Below, piece by piece: positions 17,227 through 30,729 of a DNA stretch of 64,000 nucleotides. How positions within the stretch are numbered: position 1 is the first letter of the stretch; the number at the start of each line of letters is the position of its first letter. Under the pieces are notes generated by a model, which had not been told where the DNA came from, made no database searches, and saw nothing but the letters and a program-made list of their open reading frames with translations. The translations under genes and the position numbers were made by a program. Source of the stretch: Macrostomum hystrix (Eukaryota > Animalia > Platyhelminthes); contig CATNEN010000005.1 of the NCBI GenBank assembly GCA_950097015.1, positions 2,480,001-2,544,000 of the forward strand, written 5' to 3'.

Positions 17227-18633
17227 ATGTCTTCCGCCGCTGAAGCCGAGTGGGAGCTGTGGTACTGGCCAGTAGCTGGTCGAGGCGAATTCGTTCGCCT
17301 CATCTTTGAAGAAGCCCGCGTGCCATTCAAGGAGTTCAATGATCCAAGGAAACTCACTGAGCTCTTCAAGGGACAGACCAAAGAGGGCTGGCCAGTTTTC
17401 GCTGTTCCGATGATTAGGAAAGGTGAGCAGGTGTTTTAATGGTGGCAAGGGATATGATCCAATAATTAAAATAATTAAAGTAAAATCTGATTGGGATTCT
17501 GGAGATTATGGTTGGAATTCTAAAGATTCTAATTGGGATTCTGCAGATTCTAATTGGGATTCTGAAGATTCTGATTGGGATTGTAAAGATTCTGATTGGG
17601 ATTCTAAAGATTCTGATTGGGATTCTGAGGATTTTAATTGGGATACTGAAAAATCGAAGGGAGGTTAGGGAATAATCAGAGGGTGGTGGCGAAGAGACTG
17701 GAAGGTAGGGATGAATCAAATGGAGGTGGGGAAGAATCATAAGGATGTGGGGAAGAATCATAAGGATGTGGGGAAGAATCATAAGGATGTGGGGAAGAAT
17801 CATAAGGATGTGGGGAAGAATCATAAGGAGGTGGGGAAGAATCATAAGGATGTGGGGAAGAATCAAAGGGAGGTGGGGAAGAATCAAAGGGAGGTGGGGA
17901 AGAATCACTAGGAGGTGGGGAAGATTCATTGGGGTGGGGAAGAATCATAAGGATGTGGGGAAGAATCATAATCATAAGGATGCGGGGAAGAATCATAAGG
18001 ATGTGGGGAAGAATCGGAAAATCAAAAAATGCTTATTACAGAGCCAAATAGCAAGTTGCTGTCACAATGCTTTTTCCACCCGGAATCCTGAAATGCTGAG
18101 CAGGTGATTTCGAGCTAGGCCAGACCGGTACAATCTGTCGCTATCTGGGCAAACTGTTTGGCCTTTATCCCGTCACCGAAGTGGACCAGATCAAGGCGGA
18201 CCAGCTGTGCTCTACCGTCATGGACTACATAGCCGAAGGTAGTCTAGCTTATCACGGCAAAAATTCTCAAGACACTTACGCGAGTCAGAAGGAATTCACT
18301 CAGCCCTACATTGACTTCTTTGTGGCTAGTCGGATTCCAAAGTTTCTGCGCCATTTTGAAGCCACTCTAAACTACAATAAAACTATGAATTCTATTCCGG
18401 ACCACGAGGAGGCCGAGTTGTACTGCTTTGGCAAATCACTAGCCTATTGTGATCTCTGCCTGTTGCACGTGCTGCGAGCTACGGAATCGCAGTTTCCAGA
18501 AGCTTGGCTAACCAATATTGCCAATTATCCGCTGTTGGCCAGGTTTAAACGCCATATGGAGAATAGGTCAACACTCAAGGCCTATTTTGCTTCGGATAGG
18601 TGCCGCCCGTTTGAAGGAAACAGCATGATGTGA
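17227..18633 (+). CDS. Glutathione S-transferase (Tyr-type, sigma-like N-domain); exons 17227-17422, 18104-18633
   Basis: WYWPVAGRGEFVRLIFEEA, cis-Pro motif FAVPMI, LGQTGTICRYLG, and C-domain LAYCDLCLLHVL. The phase-1 junction joins in frame. Confidence 0.93.
17485..17645. repeat. 21-bp minisatellite GATTCTAATTGGGATTCTGAA, in GST intron
   Basis: Direct reading. Confidence 0.88.
17725..18012. repeat. 21-bp minisatellite GTGGGGAAGAATCATAAGGAT, in GST intron
   Basis: Direct reading. Confidence 0.93.
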
Positions 18634-22808: not shown

Positions 22809-23340
22809 TGTAATTACGTGGTCATCACTTTTGCAATCTCGTATTTTTCTTAGATCGCTACTGTAAGTAGACGTCAACGTACATTCGAACCCCTTGGGCC
22901 ACTCATTATTATGGTTTTCCTCTCAGCCAATAGCGCGCGTCCACGCCCCTGTGCAAAGTTCAACTGCCTGTTCACTTTCTAGCCAATCTCGCGCTGCGGC
23001 ATAAATTATGTTAAACTTTGTGCCAGCCTATTTATAGCCGCTCTCCGCCCTAGCGCCCCTTCACCGCGCTGTTGCTCTCCACTGGTCGCTACTGCTCTGT
23101 CCCGACCTCCTGCCGGTCTTCTCTGTTAACCGACGTCAGTTTATCTGCCACCGCCACTATCTGATTAACCCACTACTGCCACCACTGTTAACTACGAGTA
23201 CTTTGGATTGATCAAATTGTTAATATTTCTTTTTTGAACCGCTACGGATTCGCCATAGAAGTTTATACAGACCAGTCTTACTTCTTCTTGTCAGCGTGCT
23301 TATTCAGGACTAATTATTCAGTTAAATCTTATTAGTTACA
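22809..23340 (+). other. Promoter-like GC-rich island, possible solo LTR
   Basis: TGTAA at 22809 or 22862 and TTACA at 23336-23340; CCAAT at 22927 and 22983; TATTTATA at about 23029; no convincing TSD. Confidence 0.3.
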
Positions 23341-23828
23341 TAAAATTTGTTAAAATAATGAACTCAAAGGTAAATCTACAGTTTGAGTAAGAATGCGTCT
23401 TACAAGAAACGGTTCATTAATTGCATGCAGCAAAACAATTATTTATTATAATTCAACTATCGCCAACTTTTGCACGACCCAAAAAGGGACAAAAATGAAA
23501 TTTTGAGGTTTGCTTTGGGTTGCGAAGGAGAATGCAAAAGTACTTAATTTAAATGTGCCAATAAAAAAGAGAAATGAATATTAAATTATCACTATAAATT
23601 TGTTGTAGTCTTCATGATTTTGCGTCGAATTATTCAAGATTTTCCTTTTCTGCTTTTAAAGTACATATGCACTTTTGAAGTACATGTGCACTTTGAAAGT
23701 ACATTCTAGAATGTCAATTTAATGCATATGACAGCAATGCATTTAAAAAACTATTATGACTTGAAAAAAGTTGTTAATGAAATTTGTTTCGATTTTTTTT
23801 GTTTTACTGTTTGCAAAGCGGCGGCAAT

Positions 23829-26800
23829 TCAATCTGCAAATACACCGCAACTTCTCGGCATCCTTCGGCAGCGCCTCTGACAACGCTTCTGACATCTGCG
23901 GCGACGTCTGGACTGCAGCTGACGACGGGTTCGCCGATTGTTGGCCTTGGTTTGATCCCGACAGTCGGCCCGGCAATGACACTTCAGCATGTGCCGCCGC
24001 AGATCACCTGAATTTGATAGGGCAGCTATGGATCACAATGTGATTTGGGCCTAAACCGGGTTTTTTCGATTTCGTAAATGCCAACCGCCAAACAAGTGTT
24101 TGAGTACTTGGAAACAGAGCTCAATATTAATTAGCACTTCTGTGTCCAACAGGTAACTAATACTGTATATAACATTCAGTATCTAACATTTCTGTATTAC
24201 TGCAACAGGTACAATTCAGTATCTAACATGTTTGTACTACTGTATCAGGTGAAATTCACTATCTAACATGTTTGTACTACTGTAACAGGTACAATTCAGT
24301 ATCTAACATGTTTGTACTACTGTAACATGTACAATTCAGTATCTAACATGTTTGTACTACTGTAACATGTACAATTCAGTATCTAACATGTTTGTACTAC
24401 TGTAACATGTACAATTCAGTATCTAACATGTTTGTACAACTGTAACAGGTACGATTCAGTATCTAACATGTTTGTACAACTGTAACAGGTACGATTCAGT
24501 ATCTAACATGTTTGTACTACTGTAACATGCACAATTCAGTATCTAACATGTTTGTACAACTGTAACAGGTACGATTCAGTATCTAACATGTTTGTACAAC
24601 TGTAACAGGTACGATTCAGTATCTAACATGTTTGTACTACTGTAACATGTACAATTCAGTATCTAACATGTTTGTACTACTGTAACATGTACAATTCAGT
24701 ATCTAACATGTTTGTACTACTGTAACATGTACAATTCAGTATCTAACATGTTTGTACTACTGTAACATGTACAATTCAGTATCTAACATGTTTGTACTAC
24801 TGTAACAGGTACAATTCAGTATCTAACATGTTTGTACTACTGTAACATGTACAATTCAGTACCTAACATGTTTGTACTACTGTGACATGTACAATTCAGT
24901 ATCTAACATGTTTGTACTACTGTAACATGTACAATTCAGTATCTAACATGTTTGTACTACTGTAACATGTACAATTCAGTATCTAACATGTTTGTACAAC
25001 TGTAACATGTACAATTCAGTATCTAACATGTTTGTACTACTGTAACATGTACAATTCACTATCTAACATGTTTGTACTACTGTAACATGTACAATTCAGT
25101 ATCTAACATGTTTGTACTACTGTAACATGTACAAATCAGTATCTAACATGTTTGTACTACTGTAACATGTATAATTCAGTATCTAACATGTTTGTACTAC
25201 TGTAACATGTACAATTCAGTATCTAACATGTTTGTACTACTGTAATATGTACTATTTAGTATCTACTCAAGGACACAAATTTCATCCCCTGGGCCGGAGG
25301 TAATTCGAACACGCGACCTTTCGGCCAGAAATGGGAAGCAAACAACTCACTTGTTGACAGGCAAGCCTTTTTAAAGTGCCTCTGCACAAGAACCATTCGC
25401 CTGTTTGGTAGCATTGGCCACTCGAATGCCATGTGCATTTCAAATCCTGTTAGGCCAGACACAATTCCGGTGCAATGCAGTTCGATTAGGAATGCTAAAA
25501 TACAAATAGCAATTGGAAAGATTTTTTATACACTACTTGTCAGTAGAAATGCGAACATTTTCTAATACACAGTTTATAATTTGATGCCTACACGAATCCC
25601 GAGCTGTGGGCACGAAGCCCCTTGAGGCTATACTCAGAATTGGCGTGTCCAAGACAGTTGTGTTGTGCGATTTCACTCGCAGAAGTCGATACTGAACCTT
25701 CAGGGATGTGGGATTTCAACTTTACTATGTTTAATTGAATAGAAATTGTCTAGTTAAATTTTGTTACATTTACATGAAAGTTTTTAAATATTAATAGGAT
25801 TAGGCTGATTAGATTGATAAGAGAATTGGGACAGATAAGAGATAAGACCGATAAGAGAGATGAGGCAGATGAGACAGATAAGAGAGATGAGGCAGATGAG
25901 ACAGATAAGAGAGATGAGACAGATAAGAGAGATGAGGCAGATGAGGCAGATAAGAGAGATGAGACAGATAAGAGAGATGAGGCAGATGAGACAGATAAGA
26001 GAGATGAGACAGATAAGAGAGATGAGGCAGATGAGACAGATAAGAGAGATGAGACAGATAAGAGAGATGAGGCAGATGAGGCAGATAAGAGACAGATGAG
26101 GCAGATGAGACAGATAAGAGAGATGAGGCAGATGAGACAGATAAGAGAGATGAGGCAGATGAGACAGATAAGAGAGAGATGAGGCAGATGAGACAGATAG
26201 GAGAGAGATGAGGCAGATGAGACAGATAAGAGAGATGAGGCAGATGAGACAGATAAGAGAGATGAGGCAGATGAGACAGATAAGAGAGAGATGAGGCAGA
26301 TGAGACAGATAAGAGAGATGAGGCAGATGAGACAGATGAGAGAGATGAGGCAGATGAGACAGATAAGAGAGATGAGGCAGATGAGGCAGATAAGAGACAG
26401 ATGAGACAGATAAGAGAGATGAGGCAGATAAGAGAGATGAGGCAGATGAGACAGATAAGAGAGAGATGAGGCAGATGAGACAGATAAGAGAGATGAGGCA
26501 GATGAGACAGATAGGAGAGATGAGGCAGATGAGACAGATAAGAGAGATGAGGCAGATGAGACAGATAAGAGAGAGATGAGGCAGATGAGACAGATAAGAG
26601 AGATGAGGCAGATGAGACAGATGAGAGAGATGAGGCAGATGAGACAGATAAGAGAGAGATGAGGCAGATGAGACAGATAGGAGAGAGATGAGGCAGATGA
26701 GACAGATAAGAGAGATGAGGCAGATGAGACAGATAAGAGAGATGAGGCAGATGAGACAGATAGGAGAGAGATGAGGCAGATGAGACAGATAGGAGAGAGA

Positions 26801-29800
26801 TGAGGCGGATGAGGCAGATGAGACAGATGAGACAGATGAGACAGATAAGAGAGATGAGGCAGATGAGACAGATAAGAGAGATGAGGCAGATGAGACAGAT
26901 AAGAGAGAGATGAGGCAGATGAGACAGATAAGAGAGATGAGGCAGATGAGACAGATAAGAGAGAGATGAGGCAGATGAGACAGATAAGAGAGAGATGAGG
27001 CAGATGAGACAGATAGGAGAGAGATGAGGCAGATGAGACAGATAAGAGAGATGAGGCAGATGAGACAGATAAGAGAGAGATGAGGCAGATGAGACAGATA
27101 AGAGAGAGATGAGGCAGATGAGACAGATAAGAGAGAGATGAGGCAGATGAGACAGATAGGAGAGAGATGAGGCAGATGAGACAGATAAGAGAGATGAGGC
27201 AGATGAGACAGATAAGAGAGATGAGGCAGATGAGACAGATAGGAGAGAGATGAGGCAGATGAGACAGATAAGAGAGATGAGGCAGATGAGACAGATAAGA
27301 GAGAGATGAGGCAGATGAGACAGATAAGAGAGAGATGAGGCAGATGAGACAGATAAGAGAGAGATGAGGCAGATGAGACAGATAGGAGAGAGATGAGGCA
27401 GATGAGACAGATAAGAGAGATGAGGCAGATGAGACAGATAAGAGAGATGAGGCAGATGAGACAGATAGGAGAGAGATGAGGCAGATGAGACAGATAAGAG
27501 AGATGAGGCAGATGAGACAGATAAGAGAGATGAGGCAGATGAGACAGATAAGAGAGAGATGAGGCAGATGAGACAGATAAGAGAGATGAGGCAGATGAGA
27601 CAGATAAGAGAGATGAGGCAGATGAGACAGATAGGAGAGAGATGAGGCAGATGAGACAGATAAGAGAGATGAGGCAGATGAGACAGATAAGAGAGATGAG
27701 GCAGATGAGACAGATAAGAGAGAGATGAGGCAGATGAGACAGATAAGAGAGAGATGAGGCAGATGAGACAGATAGGAGAGAGATGAGGCAGATGAGACAG
27801 ATAAGAGAGATGAGGCAGATGAGACAGATAAGAGAGATGAGGCAGATGAGACAGATAGGAGAGAGATGAGGCAGATGAGACAGATAGGAGAGAGATGAGG
27901 CGGATGAGACAGATGAGACAGATGAGACAGATGAGACAGATAAGAGAGATGAGGCGGATGAGACAGATGAGACAGATGAGACAGATGAGACAGATAAGAG
28001 AGATGAGGCAGATGAGACAGATGAGAGAGATGAGGCAGATGAGACAGATAGGAGAGAGATGAGACAGATGAGACAGATAGGAGAGAGATGAGGCAGATGA
28101 GACAGATAGGAGAGAGATGAGGCGGATGAGACAGATGAGACAGATGAGACAGATGAGACAGATAAGAGAGATGAGGCGGATGAGACAGATGAGAGAGATG
28201 AGGCAGATGAGACAGATGAGAGATATGAGACAGATAAGAGAGATGAGGCAGATAAGAGAGATGAGGCAGATGAGACAGATAGGAGAGAGATGAGACAGAT
28301 AGGAGAGAGATGAGACAGATAGGAGAGAGATGAGACAGATAAGAGAGATGAGGCGGATGAGACAGATGAGACAGATGAGAGATATGAGACAGATAAGTCA
28401 TTCAGCAGAACACAGATATCAGACAAACTTTGAAGGAGTAATCTTTGAAATACAACGAATAAAAAATGAAATTCTTGGCAGACAGATTTGAACCAAGCAA
28501 GATAAGAAAATGATTTTATTGCATTTTTTATGTTCTAACGATAATGGCAGAGTTTGACTGTCTTCTTGTCTCTTGAGAATATTTTCTTATAATGATTACT
28601 TCTCCAAGCTTAAATTAAACGCATTCGTCTTTACTGTCTGAAACTCGAAATAAAGTTGTATCGAGAACTCTAACTAATTTACTTCTGGAGAAGAATAGTT
28701 AAAAAAGTTGAAAATAAAAAAAAACTGGAAATTATTAGAAACAGGAGAAGCATAAAAATAGTAATAATATTTGCAAGAGGGCTGCGGGCAGTGGCGCATC
28801 ATTTGGTGACACTAGACCCGCAGCCAGCGAGGAGGCAATTCTGCCCATTTCGCTGACTCCTGAGCACACACGCACACAGATACTGTACTCAGGCACACGC
28901 TTACACAGGTGTGTACATCTGCCCTGACTTTCTCATCGTCAGGCAGTGTACACTCTTACTGTGCCTTCGTCTTGTCTATACAGTATACAGTGAAGCATAC
29001 TCCACCAATTAAGCATGAAAAGCATAAGAAACAAGTGAGCATTATTGATCAAAAGCAATGCCCAGTTCTCACCCTAGACTCGCCGTAGACTCCTGACGCC
29101 GCAGTCCAATTAAATCTGAGGAAATTGAGATTGTGCGACAGTGCAATTCCACGAGGAGATAAAAAGTCCAACGGTGGATGGGCCAGGGCCGTGTCGTTTA
29201 GGACCAGGTGATATGCCGATTGGATCAGCGCGTTGTGCAGCTCGGTTGATTGTCCTGCGAATTGTGCAGATATGAGGCCAAATATTCATTAGCATCTGAA
29301 TCTTGATCAATAGATTTGCAGCTAGATCAATAGATTTGCAGCTAGATCAATAGATTTGCAGCTAGATAAATAGATTTGCAGCTAGATAAATAGATTTGCA
29401 GCTAGATAAATAGATTTGCAGCTAGATCAATAGATTTGCAGCTAGATCAATAGATTTGCAGCTAGATAAATGGATTTGCAGCTAGATCAATAGATTTGCA
29501 GCTAGATCAATAGATTTGCAGCTAGATCAATAGATTTGCAGCTAGATCAATAGATTTGCAGCTAGATAAATAGATTTGCAGCTAGATCAATAGATTTGCA
29601 GCTAGATAAATAGATTTGCAGCTAGATAAATAGATTTGCAGCTAGATAAATAGATGTACTGCTAGATCAATTCGCAGCATTACCAAAACAGAAAAAAAAT
29701 TACAAATAGACAAACAGCTAGACCAGCAGACTAGCAGCTAGACCAGCAGACTAGCAGCTAGACCAGCAGACTAACAGCTAGACCAGCAGACTAACAGCTA

Positions 29801-30105
29801 GTCCAGCAGACTAACAGCTAGACCAGCAGACTAACAGCTAGACCAGCAGACTAACAGCTAGACTAGCAGACTAACAGCTAGACTAGCAGACTAACAGCTA
29901 GACTAGCAGACTAACAGCTTGAAAGTATCTCACTTGGCTTGCATCTGCTTGCTCGCAGTGGTCTCCTAGAAGACAGAAACTGCATCCAGTCGAACACCTG
30001 GGACAATGTAGATCGGTCTAGCCAGAGATTGAGGCCGTTCGCTCCGGTTGTTGCAACCAGCACGAGCAGTGACATTGTGAGCAGTATTGGTCTAGACACT
30101 GGCAT
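23829..30105 (-). CDS. Secreted WIF-domain protein, 260 aa, with Arg/Cys-rich tail; exons 30105-29934, 29254-29073, 25697-25592, 25494-25351, 24007-23829
   Basis: Signal peptide MPVSRPILLTMSLLVLVATTGANG, then LNLWLD, HNLNFLRFNWTAA, PILSIASRGFVP, FLIELHCTG, FKKAC, all WIF-domain hallmarks. Exon lengths 172+182+106+144+179=783 nt; phases 1,0,1,1 are consistent. Confidence 0.9.
24165..25250. repeat. 40-bp minisatellite ACAATTCAGTATCTAACATGTTTGTACTACTGTAACATGT, in WIF-gene intron 4
   Basis: Exact period 40. Confidence 0.97.
25830..28397. repeat. Purine-rich minisatellite of 9/11-bp modules (GAGGCAGAT, GAGACAGAT, A(A/G)GAGAGAT; 27-29-bp units), in WIF-gene intron 2
   Basis: Direct reading; source of the artefact ORFs 25750-28426. 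Confidence 0.97.
28771..28967 (-). mobile_element. SINE family A, 3' half, reverse orientation, in WIF-gene intron 2
   Basis: Reverse complement matches GATGAGAAAGTCAGGGCAGATG...GCTCAGGAGTCAGCGAAATGGGCAGAATTGCC...CCCGCAGCCCTC. Confidence 0.88.
29305..29670. repeat. 20-bp minisatellite TAGATTTGCAGCTAGAT(C/A)AA, in WIF-gene intron 1
   Basis: Exact period 20. Confidence 0.96.
29715..29918. repeat. 20-bp minisatellite GACCAGCAGACTAACAGCTA, in WIF-gene intron 1
   Basis: Exact period 20. Confidence 0.95.
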
Positions 30106-30729
30106 GGTTACTAATTTTCTACTGATCTTAAATTCAACGGATCGAAAATGTTTCTTTTCAGAATAAATAAAAAATCGTTGTCAAATTTGTTCTATATTGT
30201 CTTCTTGTGCTTGTATTACGCAGACGAGATAGCAGAAAAATTGTGAGAACCTCCTCGCTGTACAGACGAGCAGCACAGAAATTGTAAAGACGGAAGGCGT
30301 AGGTGTAGGAGGGTTATGGCCTGTTTTTCATTCGTTGAATTTTTCTAGCTAAATAGCTAATGCAAATTTTGTCTTGAATAAATGCACTAAAACTGTAGCT
30401 TGGCTTGCCTGAAGAAAAACTAATTACTCATTCTAATACTCCTCAGCTTTGGCTAAAACACCTACGCAATTTTACTCAAATTTAGTCTGCCTAACTCGCT
30501 TGTTATAGTTATTTAAGAAAGTGAGTCCCCCTGCTTTCAAAATAGGCAAATAGCACAAGCTGGACGTGTGCCTTGTACTAGTATTCCATTACTGCTTCAA
30601 CTTCTAGTTGAACTTGATTCAACTTAGTCAACAAATAGAGACAACTCAACAGACAGGTGGAACAGTCTGGGCAGTCTGTCTCTTAGCCTAATTTGTTATT
30701 CTAAAATCTGATAACTGTTACCATACAAT

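What the first reader, a model, noticed from the sequence alone, without database searches (positions are those of the whole stretch)
23829..30105. Secreted WIF-only protein: no EGF repeats, no TM or kinase
Seen: five phase-consistent exons give signal peptide + complete WIF domain (with a ~30-aa Cys-containing insert after LNLWLD) + 59-aa tail + stop. The supplied ORF track misses this gene almost entirely. Established: WIF domains occur in WIF1/Shifted (followed by five EGF repeats that bind heparan sulfate) and Ryk/Derailed (TM + kinase). The LWLD start is WIF1-like, while FLIELHCTG is Ryk-like. Inference: a third architecture, a soluble Wnt (or Hedgehog) binder where a polybasic tail replaces the EGF HSPG-binding module.
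Basis: partly seen in the sequence, partly recalled or inferred. Interest (0 to 1): 0.78.

Follow-up and report, generated by a model that had tools for sequence, protein, structure and literature searches.

The report
Flatworm secreted WIF protein, Cys-stapled basic tail
This is a real, expressed Macrostomum flatworm gene for a small secreted protein made of a Wnt/Hedgehog-binding WIF domain plus a conserved cysteine-braced, arginine-rich tail in place of the usual EGF repeats or receptor kinase; it is a lineage-specific variant whose function is untested.

Summary
Observation confirmed. Five GT-AG exons on the minus strand (30105-23829) give a 260-aa protein: signal peptide, WIF domain with a ~30-aa insert holding one Cys, and a 59-aa tail.

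The genome matches the published M. hystrix assembly (220 Mb, 42 contigs). It has five WIF loci: three Ryk-type (WIF + TM + Ryk-like kinase), this gene, and a paralogue on contig C12 with the same intron phases, insert and tail. No WIF+EGF gene was found.

M. lignano has orthologues of both paralogues, filed only as 'hypothetical' or 'WIF domain-containing protein'. The orthologue scores 45.9 bits on Pfam WIF, and its model matches human WIF-1 and Drl-2 structures.

The tail is more than polybasic. It is a conserved 7-Cys module (C-x-C-x3-C, basic linker of ~22 to ~90 aa, C-x3-C-x3-C-x6-C), and its odd Cys count is balanced by the insert's single Cys.

Binding of Wnt or Hedgehog, and anchoring to heparan sulfate, are inferred and untested. 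I rate it a new variant of a known kind.

The scan noted the same idea on another piece of this genome (s1-291369), probably the C12 paralogue. The joined window model was never searched; I worked exon by exon and used the M. lignano protein as the full-length proxy.

The parts
30106..30280 (-). 5' UTR (extent inferred, not mapped)
   Evidence: The longest contig (X2, 1065 nt) has 779 nt upstream of the e4/e5 joint. Of these, 604 nt are coding, leaving about 175 nt. An in-frame TGA lies 78 nt upstream of the ATG.
29934..30105 (-). Exon 1: ATG, signal peptide (about residues 1-22/24), LNLWLD start of the WIF domain, and the first part of the insert ending ...SRCKP. Phase-1 donor GTGAGA.
   Evidence: It is 54-58% identical to exon 1 of the M. 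lignano orthologue and 49% over 39 aa to the C12 paralogue, including the PLR..RCKP motif.
29255..29933 (-). Intron 1, mostly two 20-bp minisatellites (29305-29671 and 29708-29919)
29073..29254 (-). Exon 2: end of the insert (QSTELHNALIQS), then WIF strands up to FNWTAASG. Two N-x-S/T sequons.
   Evidence: It is 53% identical to the M. lignano orthologue. No Pfam hit on its own.
25698..29072 (-). Intron 2, with a 2.5-kb minisatellite of 27/83-bp units (25840-28394)
25592..25697 (-). Exon 3: middle of the WIF domain (VQYRLLRVKSHNTTVLDTPILSIASRGFVP)
   Evidence: Pfam WIF positions 56-86, E 8e-4, 19.6 bits. The genome scan gave 19 bits for positions 53-89. It is 60% identical to M. lignano and 52% to the C12 paralogue.
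25351..25494 (-). Exon 4: C-terminal third of the WIF domain with its two cysteines (ELHC...KKAC)
   Evidence: Pfam WIF positions 90-131, E 0.013, 15.7 bits. It is 72% identical to M. lignano and 45% to the C12 paralogue. Its last 30 nt are joined to exon 5 in transcript contigs.
24008..25350 (-). Intron 4, with a 40-bp x 27 minisatellite (24174-25265). It is spliced out in RNA.
23829..24007 (-). Exon 5: the tail (58 aa plus stop), with 22 K/R, 7 Cys and pI 11.8
   Evidence: It is 56% identical to the M. lignano tail with all 7 Cys kept. The C12 paralogue and M. lignano paralogue B show the same Cys pattern.
23961..23981 (-). First Cys cluster of the tail, C-H-C-R-A-D-C (C-x-C-x3-C)
   Evidence: Invariant in the alignments and present in paralogue B
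23895..23960 (-). Polybasic linker (RDQTKANNRRTRRQLQSRRRRR) with several R-x-K/R-R motifs. It is 22 aa here and about 85-90 aa in paralogue B.
23847..23894 (-). Second Cys cluster of the tail, C-QKR-C-QRR-C-RRMPRS-C (C-x3-C-x3-C-x6-C)
   Evidence: C38, C42, C46, P50 and C53 are invariant in all four tails
23722..23828 (-). 3' UTR covered by the same contigs that carry the e4-e5 joint. The true 3' end is not determined.
   Evidence: contig ends at 23722-23760. Separate contigs cover 23399-23698 and could not be assigned.

Best explanation
The gene encodes a 260-aa secreted glycoprotein of a Macrostomum flatworm. It consists of one WIF domain followed by a family-specific C-terminal module.

Shown:
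- The five-exon model holds, and transcripts carry the exon 4-exon 5 joint.
- The WIF identity is established.
- A paralogue in this genome and orthologues of both genes in M. lignano share the same insert and the same 7-Cys tail.
- Nothing follows the tail: no EGF, TM or kinase exons.

Inferred:
- The WIF domain binds a lipid-modified morphogen. The genome has at least 11 Wnt loci and one Hedgehog gene as candidate ligands.
- The tail is a disulfide-braced helix-loop-helix whose arginine-rich loop holds the protein on heparan sulfate or another polyanionic matrix. This is the job the EGF repeats do in WIF1/Shifted.
- The protein would then act as a local, matrix-tethered decoy or distributor of Wnt or Hedgehog.
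- The seventh tail Cys probably pairs with the single Cys of the WIF insert, tying the tail to the domain. Alternatively it forms a dimer.

Most likely these two genes are the Macrostomum descendants of WIF1 in which the EGF repeats were replaced.

The confidence of 0.5 is for the whole statement including the inferred function. The shown parts (gene model, architecture, WIF identity, conservation) stand at about 0.95.
For: Gene model.

Transcripts:
- Contigs from four runs of one study cover exon 5, are absent from the flanking intron, and continue at 24007 with the exact last 30 nt of exon 4.
- No retrocopy exists in the genome: exons 4 and 5 each hit only one locus, or that locus plus the paralogue.

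WIF identity:
- Exons 3 and 4 hit consecutive parts of Pfam WIF.
- The M. lignano orthologue P0003 scores 45.9 bits (E 6e-12) and paralogue P0001 47.3 bits.
- The AF2 model of P0003 matches human WIF-1 WIF (E 1.4e-8, TM 0.60-0.72) and Drl-2 (E 8.5e-8).
- The family profile scores WIF-1 at 33.6 bits and Drl-2 at 22.3 bits.

Constraint on the new parts:
- Insert Cys, the 7 tail Cys, intron positions and phases are kept in the C12 paralogue and in M. lignano proteins P0003 and P0008, while the linker length varies about four-fold.
- Cys count: 1 + 2 + 7 = 10, an even number.

Secretion: hydrophobic N-terminus and three N-x-S/T sequons. Their counterparts in M. lignano were read from the alignment.

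End of gene: synteny with a convergent GST gene.

Inventory: the three other WIF loci are Ryk-type, and there is no WIF+EGF locus.

Ligands present: Wnt and Hedgehog.

Literature:
- An isolated human WIF domain blocks Wnt8 and Shh, and the EGF repeats serve HSPG binding (PMC8699845).
- No canonical WIF1 was found in platyhelminths (PMC7565927).

Tail-only AF2 gives helix 11-23, a loop, then helix 30-45.
Against: - No binding, localisation or phenotype data exist for any member of the family.
- The WIF domain is divergent: 15-18% identity to solved WIF domains, and exons 1, 2 and 5 have no Pfam hit on their own. Ligand specificity cannot be read from the sequence.
- The tail models are of low confidence (pLDDT 50-68). 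The full-length model draws one long helix rather than a hairpin, and no solved fold matches the tail.
- The multiple R-x-K/R-R motifs could equally be proprotein-convertase sites.
- The WIF1-versus-Ryk origin rests on one representative of each.
- Only one splice junction was seen directly in RNA.
- The library type of the runs is not on record; they were taken as RNA from the coverage pattern.
Confidence: 0.5

Rival explanations
1. It is a secreted WIF-fold protein that has left morphogen control. It might be a lineage-specific gland, seminal-fluid, matrix or defence protein. The WIF pocket would then carry some other lipid, and the cationic Cys-rich tail would be the active part, for example released by furin-type cleavage as a disulfide-linked cationic peptide that binds polyanions or microbes.
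For: - The WIF domain is highly divergent.
- The family was found only in Macrostomum among 1.84 billion representative proteins, using the exon-4 profile, and by two word-based searches.
- The tail has protamine- or defensin-like composition (38% K/R, 7 Cys) with several R-x-K/R-R motifs.
- No expression pattern is known.
Against: - In every studied case the WIF domain is a Wnt/Hedgehog-binding module (PMC8699845).
- The WIF core is the best conserved part between species, with exon 4 at 70-72%.
- The genome keeps a rich Wnt set but has no other secreted WIF protein.
Confidence: 0.3
2. The model is incomplete. The real transcript skips or reads past the tail exon and continues into EGF or TM/kinase exons, so the gene would be an ordinary WIF1 or Ryk.
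For: Only one junction was laid on reads. The contigs stop 70-107 nt after the stop codon, and separate contigs lie at 23399-23698.
Against: - In all four runs the contig joins e4 to e5 and carries the in-frame stop.
- The tail is conserved in frame in a paralogue and in two M. lignano genes.
- A convergent GST gene follows the gene in both species.
- Ryk-like kinase exons lie next to the other three WIF loci only.
Confidence: 0.03
3. It is a decaying duplicate of a Ryk ectodomain or of WIF1, transcribed but without function, and the arginine-rich tail is read-through of former non-coding sequence.
For: The protein is short, its sequence is divergent, its introns are packed with minisatellites, and the contig depth is low (about 9).
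Against: - The reading frame is intact and all splice sites are canonical.
- Two paralogues each have an orthologue in a species about 40% diverged at the protein level.
- All ten cysteines and the sequons are kept.
Confidence: 0.03

Closest known systems
WIF1 (vertebrates) / Shifted (Drosophila)
   Same: Both are secreted, with a signal peptide followed directly by a single N-terminal WIF domain starting L-x-L-W-(I/L)-D. The WIF disulfide pair is kept. A family profile scores human WIF-1 best. The part after the WIF domain is basic or hydrophilic and plausibly binds the matrix.
   Different: There are no EGF-like repeats, whereas WIF1 has five. In their place is a 59-aa 7-Cys arginine-rich module with no Pfam or PDB match. 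The WIF domain also carries a ~30-aa insert with one Cys after helix 1. Pennarubia et al. found no canonical WIF1 in platyhelminths (PMC7565927).
Ryk / Derailed / LIN-18 receptors
   Same: They share the WIF domain fold (Drl-2 7me5, E 8.5e-8). In this genome's three Ryk genes, the exon boundaries fall at about the same two WIF-profile positions, around 54 and 88.
   Different: The protein has no transmembrane segment and no Ryk-type pseudokinase. In this genome those exons lie 5-10 kb downstream of the three other WIF loci only. The profile score to Drl-2 is lower than to WIF-1.
sFRPs (secreted Frizzled-related proteins)
   Same: The logic is the same: a soluble copy of a Wnt-binding ectodomain joined to a basic, heparin-binding C-terminal module. 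This comparison comes from general knowledge and was not tested here.
   Different: The folds are unrelated (Fz CRD plus NTR). There is no sequence relation.
Cys-rich basic C-terminal retention domains, such as the heparin-binding domain of VEGF-A165
   Same: These are short, exon-encoded, cysteine-braced, highly basic C-terminal modules that tether a secreted signal regulator to heparan sulfate. The analogy comes from general knowledge only.
   Different: No sequence or fold match was found. The Cys spacing differs. This is an analogy, not homology.

Membership tests
WIF domain (Pfam PF02019) | Match to the family HMM above the gathering score (25 bits) | tested here: inconclusive
   Window protein, exon by exon: e3 scores 19.6 bits (positions 56-86) and e4 15.7 bits (positions 90-131), in the right order but each below 25. 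e1, e2 and e5 have no hit. The joined model was not scanned, by rule. The M. lignano orthologue, 54-72% identical per exon, scores 45.9 bits, and paralogue B scores 47.3 bits. Both are above the cut-off.
WIF domain (Pfam PF02019) | WIF beta-sandwich fold | tested here: met
   The AF2 model of orthologue P0003 has core pLDDT of 70-85. The six best Foldseek PDB hits are all WIF domains: five human WIF-1 entries (2ygp, 2d3j, 2ygo, 2ygq, 2ygn; E 1.4e-8 to 2.8e-8) and Drl-2 7me5 (E 8.5e-8). The next hit is at E 7.6e-3. This was tested on the orthologue, not on the window protein itself.
WIF domain (Pfam PF02019) | Conserved intradomain cysteine pair in the C-terminal third | tested here: met
   ELHC...KKAC in exon 4. 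The first Cys aligns with the Cys of this genome's Ryk WIF domains and of human WIF-1; the second aligns with the Ryk Cys.
WIF1 / Shifted | Five EGF-like repeats after the WIF domain | tested here: not met
   A stop codon comes 59 codons after the WIF domain. The tail has no EGF Pfam hit. Transcript contigs end in the 3' UTR. A convergent GST gene follows the gene.
WIF1 / Shifted | WIF domain orthologous to that of WIF1 rather than Ryk | tested here: inconclusive
   The family profile gives WIF-1 33.6 bits (E 2.5e-7) and Drl-2 22.3 bits (E 7e-4). P0003 alone hits only WIF-1 among PDB WIF sequences (E 0.017). This is one representative per clade and no tree was built.
Ryk / Derailed | Transmembrane helix and Ryk-type (DNA-motif) kinase domain after the WIF domain | tested here: not met
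   Neither is present in the transcript. Ryk-like kinase exons lie only near C38:1.47M, C29:8.52M and C38:20.01M, and TM segments follow the WIF domain at C38:1.46M and C29:8.51M.
Heparan-sulfate-binding tail (functional class) | Binding to heparin or HSPG | not testable with these tools
   Only composition is available: 22 K/R in 58 aa, pI 11.8.

The most novel reading that the evidence does not exclude
Macrostomum, and perhaps flatworms more widely, replaced the EGF repeats of WIF1 with a new kind of matrix-anchoring module. This would be a disulfide-stapled helix-loop-helix with an expandable poly-arginine loop, covalently tied by an extra disulfide to a new insert in the WIF domain. The result would be a third, so far undescribed class of WIF-family Wnt/Hedgehog regulator, with two paralogues whose loop length (about 22 against about 90 residues) sets different matrix affinity or range.
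Probability: 0.3. Interest if true: 0.6.

Novelty: new variant of a known kind. Interest (0 to 1): 0.45.

Why it matters
WIF domains are known in two settings: WIF1/Shifted, a secreted protein with EGF repeats, and the Ryk receptors. A survey found no canonical WIF1 in flatworms, yet flatworm papers list a 'wif' gene without describing its architecture.

This gene and its paralogue show what the non-Ryk WIF proteins look like in one early-branching flatworm genus, and they point to a compact new cysteine-braced polyarginine module. Macrostomum lignano can be made transgenic and is open to RNAi, so the idea can be tested directly: a different heparan-sulfate anchor may do the job of the EGF repeats. 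The result would bear on how Wnt and Hedgehog gradients are shaped in flatworm regeneration.

The limits should be stated as well. The family is lineage-restricted, its sequences are already public though unnamed, and no function has been shown.

Tried and rejected
I laid the part beside them, 23300-24280, as the tool advised.
- Pfam on exons 1, 2 and 5 alone found nothing, apart from a chance 7.5-bit capsid hit on the tail. Pfam on the tails of P0003 and the C12 paralogue also found nothing meaningful.
- The exon-4 profile against PDB sequences gave no WIF hit. It is too short and divergent; the full family profile worked.
- The big representative search with the exon-4 profile returned six hits. 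Five are M. lignano relatives and the sixth (P0006) is unrelated; there was no Ryk or WIF1.
- Two word-based searches, with P0003 and with profile A6, returned M. lignano only. Neither can show absence in other flatworms, because a 47-aa profile and shared 5-mers do not reach distant WIF domains.
- The ESM Atlas gave only weak (0.80) WIF fragment clusters.
- Foldseek with the tail model gave no match.
- MAFFT misaligned the first Cys cluster of the long-linker paralogues. I read that cluster from the sequences themselves.
- Paper searches for the M. lignano gene ids, and for WIF domain plus Platyhelminthes, gave no hits. Riddiford and Olson 2011 is not held. The architecture of planarian, tapeworm and schistosome 'wif' genes therefore could not be checked.
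- dN/dS was not attempted, since 55-70% protein identity means synonymous sites are saturated.
- Complex prediction with a Wnt was not run. WIF-Wnt binding is thought to depend on the lipid, and no full-length Wnt was available by reference.
- The pseudogene and truncated-model readings were considered and rejected (see the rival explanations).
Full report
GENE MODEL.
- e1 30105-29934
- e2 29254-29073
- e3 25697-25592
- e4 25494-25351
- e5 24007-23829

All four introns are GT...AG, the phases are 1, 0, 1, 1, and the CDS is 783 nt (260 aa). The split codons give R, S and S. An in-frame TGA lies 78 nt upstream of the ATG with no ATG between. The introns are almost entirely minisatellites, which explains why an ORF track misses the gene.

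Every search used single exons by reference. For full-length questions I used the orthologous database protein P0003.

TRANSCRIPTS.
- The look-up of sequencing runs returned four runs of one study and one coded organism, kept as Logan contigs, with library type not on record.
The part beside them, 23300-24280, was laid.
- In each run one contig of 508-1065 nt matches 23722/23760-24007 without a mismatch. Nothing covers the intron flank 24026-24280. At 24007 the contig continues with 30 letters that occur once in the window, at 25351-25380, which is the last 30 nt of exon 4.
- The e4-e5 joint is therefore real, and the runs behave as RNA.
- A processed retrocopy is excluded: exons 4 and 5 hit no other locus in the genome except the paralogue.
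- The parts of the contigs upstream of the joint (251-779 nt) fit 604 nt of coding sequence plus up to about 175 nt of 5' UTR.
- The other three junctions were not seen in reads.

WIF IDENTITY.
- Exon by exon, Pfam WIF matches e3 (positions 56-86, E 8e-4) and e4 (positions 90-131, E 0.013), in order.
- The big representative search with an exon-4 profile found six proteins. Five are M. lignano relatives and the sixth, P0006, is unrelated.
- P0003 (PAA71703.1 / A0A267FDC2, 264 aa, 'hypothetical protein BOX15_Mlig030313g1') is the orthologue. It is 54-72% identical exon by exon, and all five exons map in the same order on its genomic locus.
- P0003 scores 45.9 bits (E 6e-12) on Pfam WIF.
- Its AF2 model has a core pLDDT of 70-85. 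The six best PDB matches are all WIF domains: human WIF-1 at E 1.4e-8 and TM 0.60-0.72, and Drl-2 at E 8.5e-8. The next hit is at E 7.6e-3.
- A profile of the family scores human WIF-1 at 33.6 bits and Drosophila Drl-2 at 22.3 bits. This is a mild lean towards WIF1 ancestry and is not decisive.

A SMALL CONSERVED FAMILY.
- The genome (220,453,370 bases, 42 contigs) has the size and contig count published for Macrostomum hystrix (PMC10468722). Earlier scan notes also call it Macrostomum.
- A six-frame scan with PF02019 finds five WIF loci.
- Three are Ryk-type. At C38:1.46M and C29:8.51M a TM segment follows the WIF domain. A Ryk-like kinase exon with the 'ADASLARDLFP' motif lies 5-10 kb downstream of all three loci (C38:1.46M, C29:8.51M, C38:19.99M).
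- The fourth is this gene.
- The fifth, at C12:139-143 kb, is a paralogue with the same build. It has a signal peptide, ELNVWFER, an insert ending PLRPRCKP, WIF exons cut at the same positions and phases, and a last exon that opens KCHCRKLC, runs through about 90 mostly basic residues and closes CQAECRLECRAKPKSC before the stop.
- M. lignano has the orthologue of that paralogue too (P0008, 307 aa).
- No WIF+EGF gene is detectable. This fits a published survey that found no canonical WIF1 in platyhelminths (PMC7565927).

THE NEW PARTS ARE UNDER CONSTRAINT.
- In all four proteins the tail keeps seven cysteines in the pattern C-x-C-x3-C ... C-x3-C-x3-C-x2-P-x3-C. The basic linker between the clusters varies from about 22 to about 90 residues.
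- The insert keeps one cysteine in R-C-(K/R)-P.
- With the two WIF cysteines, the mature protein has ten. The odd tail count is matched by the insert's single Cys. This suggests, but does not show, an insert-tail disulfide.
- Three N-x-S/T sequons lie in exons 2 and 3. Their counterparts in P0003 can be read in the alignment.
- A tail-only AF2 model gives helix 11-23, a loop, then helix 30-45 at pLDDT 68. The full-length model draws one long, low-confidence helix. No solved fold or Pfam family matches the tail.
- The paired C-x3-C spacing resembles that of disulfide-stapled helical hairpins. This comparison is from my own knowledge and is only a lead.

THE GENE ENDS AT THE TAIL. In M. lignano the WIF gene is followed by a convergent GST_C_3 gene and then a UQ_con gene. 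In the window a GST_C_3 ORF (18181-18633, plus strand, E 4e-12) lies in the same convergent position. It is separated from the gene by a P-element/THAP ORF and a weak WSC-like ORF.

MECHANISM.
Established elsewhere:
- WIF domains bind Wnts and Hedgehog.
- The isolated human WIF domain inhibits Wnt8 and Shh about as well as full-length WIF1.
- The EGF repeats mainly provide HSPG binding and full potency (PMC8699845).

Present here: at least 11 Wnt loci and one Hedgehog gene.

Inference, about 0.5: the protein is a matrix-tethered Wnt/Hedgehog binder in which the 7-Cys arginine-rich module (38% K/R, pI 11.8) takes over the anchoring role of the EGF repeats.

Main rival, about 0.3: the WIF fold has been recruited to another job, and the cationic tail, possibly cut at its R-x-K/R-R motifs, is the active part.

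Unlikely, about 0.03 each: a mis-modelled gene or a pseudogene.

KNOWN OR NEW.
- The M. lignano proteins are public but carry only automatic names.
- No paper in the library mentions their ids.
- A 2026 preprint on flatworm Wnt components in M. hystrix and M. cliftonense covers Wnt, Frizzled and sFRP, with Notum expression studied in Stenostomum, but not WIF or Ryk.
- Planarian, tapeworm and schistosome 'wif' genes are mentioned in papers without their architecture. I could not retrieve their sequences, so it stays open whether the tail is specific to Macrostomum or is flatworm-wide.
- A first-reader note of this scan (s1-291369) describes the same idea on another piece of this genome, probably the C12 paralogue.

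VERDICT. This is a new variant of a known kind, of moderate interest.

Noticed in passing
window 24174-25265, 25840-28394, 29305-29671, 29708-29919; L014 450-800 and 1330-2700: Introns 1, 2 and 4 of this gene are almost wholly minisatellites, with units of 40, 27/83 and 20 bp. The corresponding introns 2 and 4 of the C12 paralogue also hold unrelated minisatellites. The arrays therefore arose independently in equivalent introns of a genome crowded with such arrays.
   Followed up: partly
window 23399-23698: Separate transcript contigs at lower depth (about 4-5 against about 9) lie 25-60 nt beyond the end of the contigs that carry exon 5. They could be a longer 3' UTR from a distal poly(A) site, with an ATTAAA at 23723-23718 between the two sets, or the end of a convergent plus-strand transcript.
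   Followed up: no
In M. lignano that gap is under 0.5 kb.
   Followed up: partly
window 18181-18633 (+); L020 13343-14671: A GST_C_3 gene lies convergent to the WIF gene in both Macrostomum species. This local synteny is conserved even though protein divergence is about 40%.
   Followed up: yes
G000 C38:1460702-1472778, C29:8514554-8522810, C38:19993308-20011088: There are three Ryk-type genes (WIF + TM + Ryk-like kinase with an 'ADASLARDLFP' motif) in one flatworm genome. The two on C38 have the more similar WIF exons.
   Followed up: partly
G000 C9:1026323-1092758 and C1:22.1-26.3 Mb: There are large tandem arrays of tyrosine-kinase genes: eight near-identical copies on C9, and a dozen or more on C1, nearly all (13 of 15 listed) with one or two in-frame stops inside the kinase match. 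The first look gave 862 kinase candidates genome-wide.
   Followed up: no
P0002, P0004, P0005, P0009 (M. lignano UniProt entries): Several M. lignano models of these two genes are chimeric or mis-spliced. They carry misleading automatic names ('Velvet domain-containing', 'ZP domain-containing'), and one lacks exon 4.
   Followed up: partly
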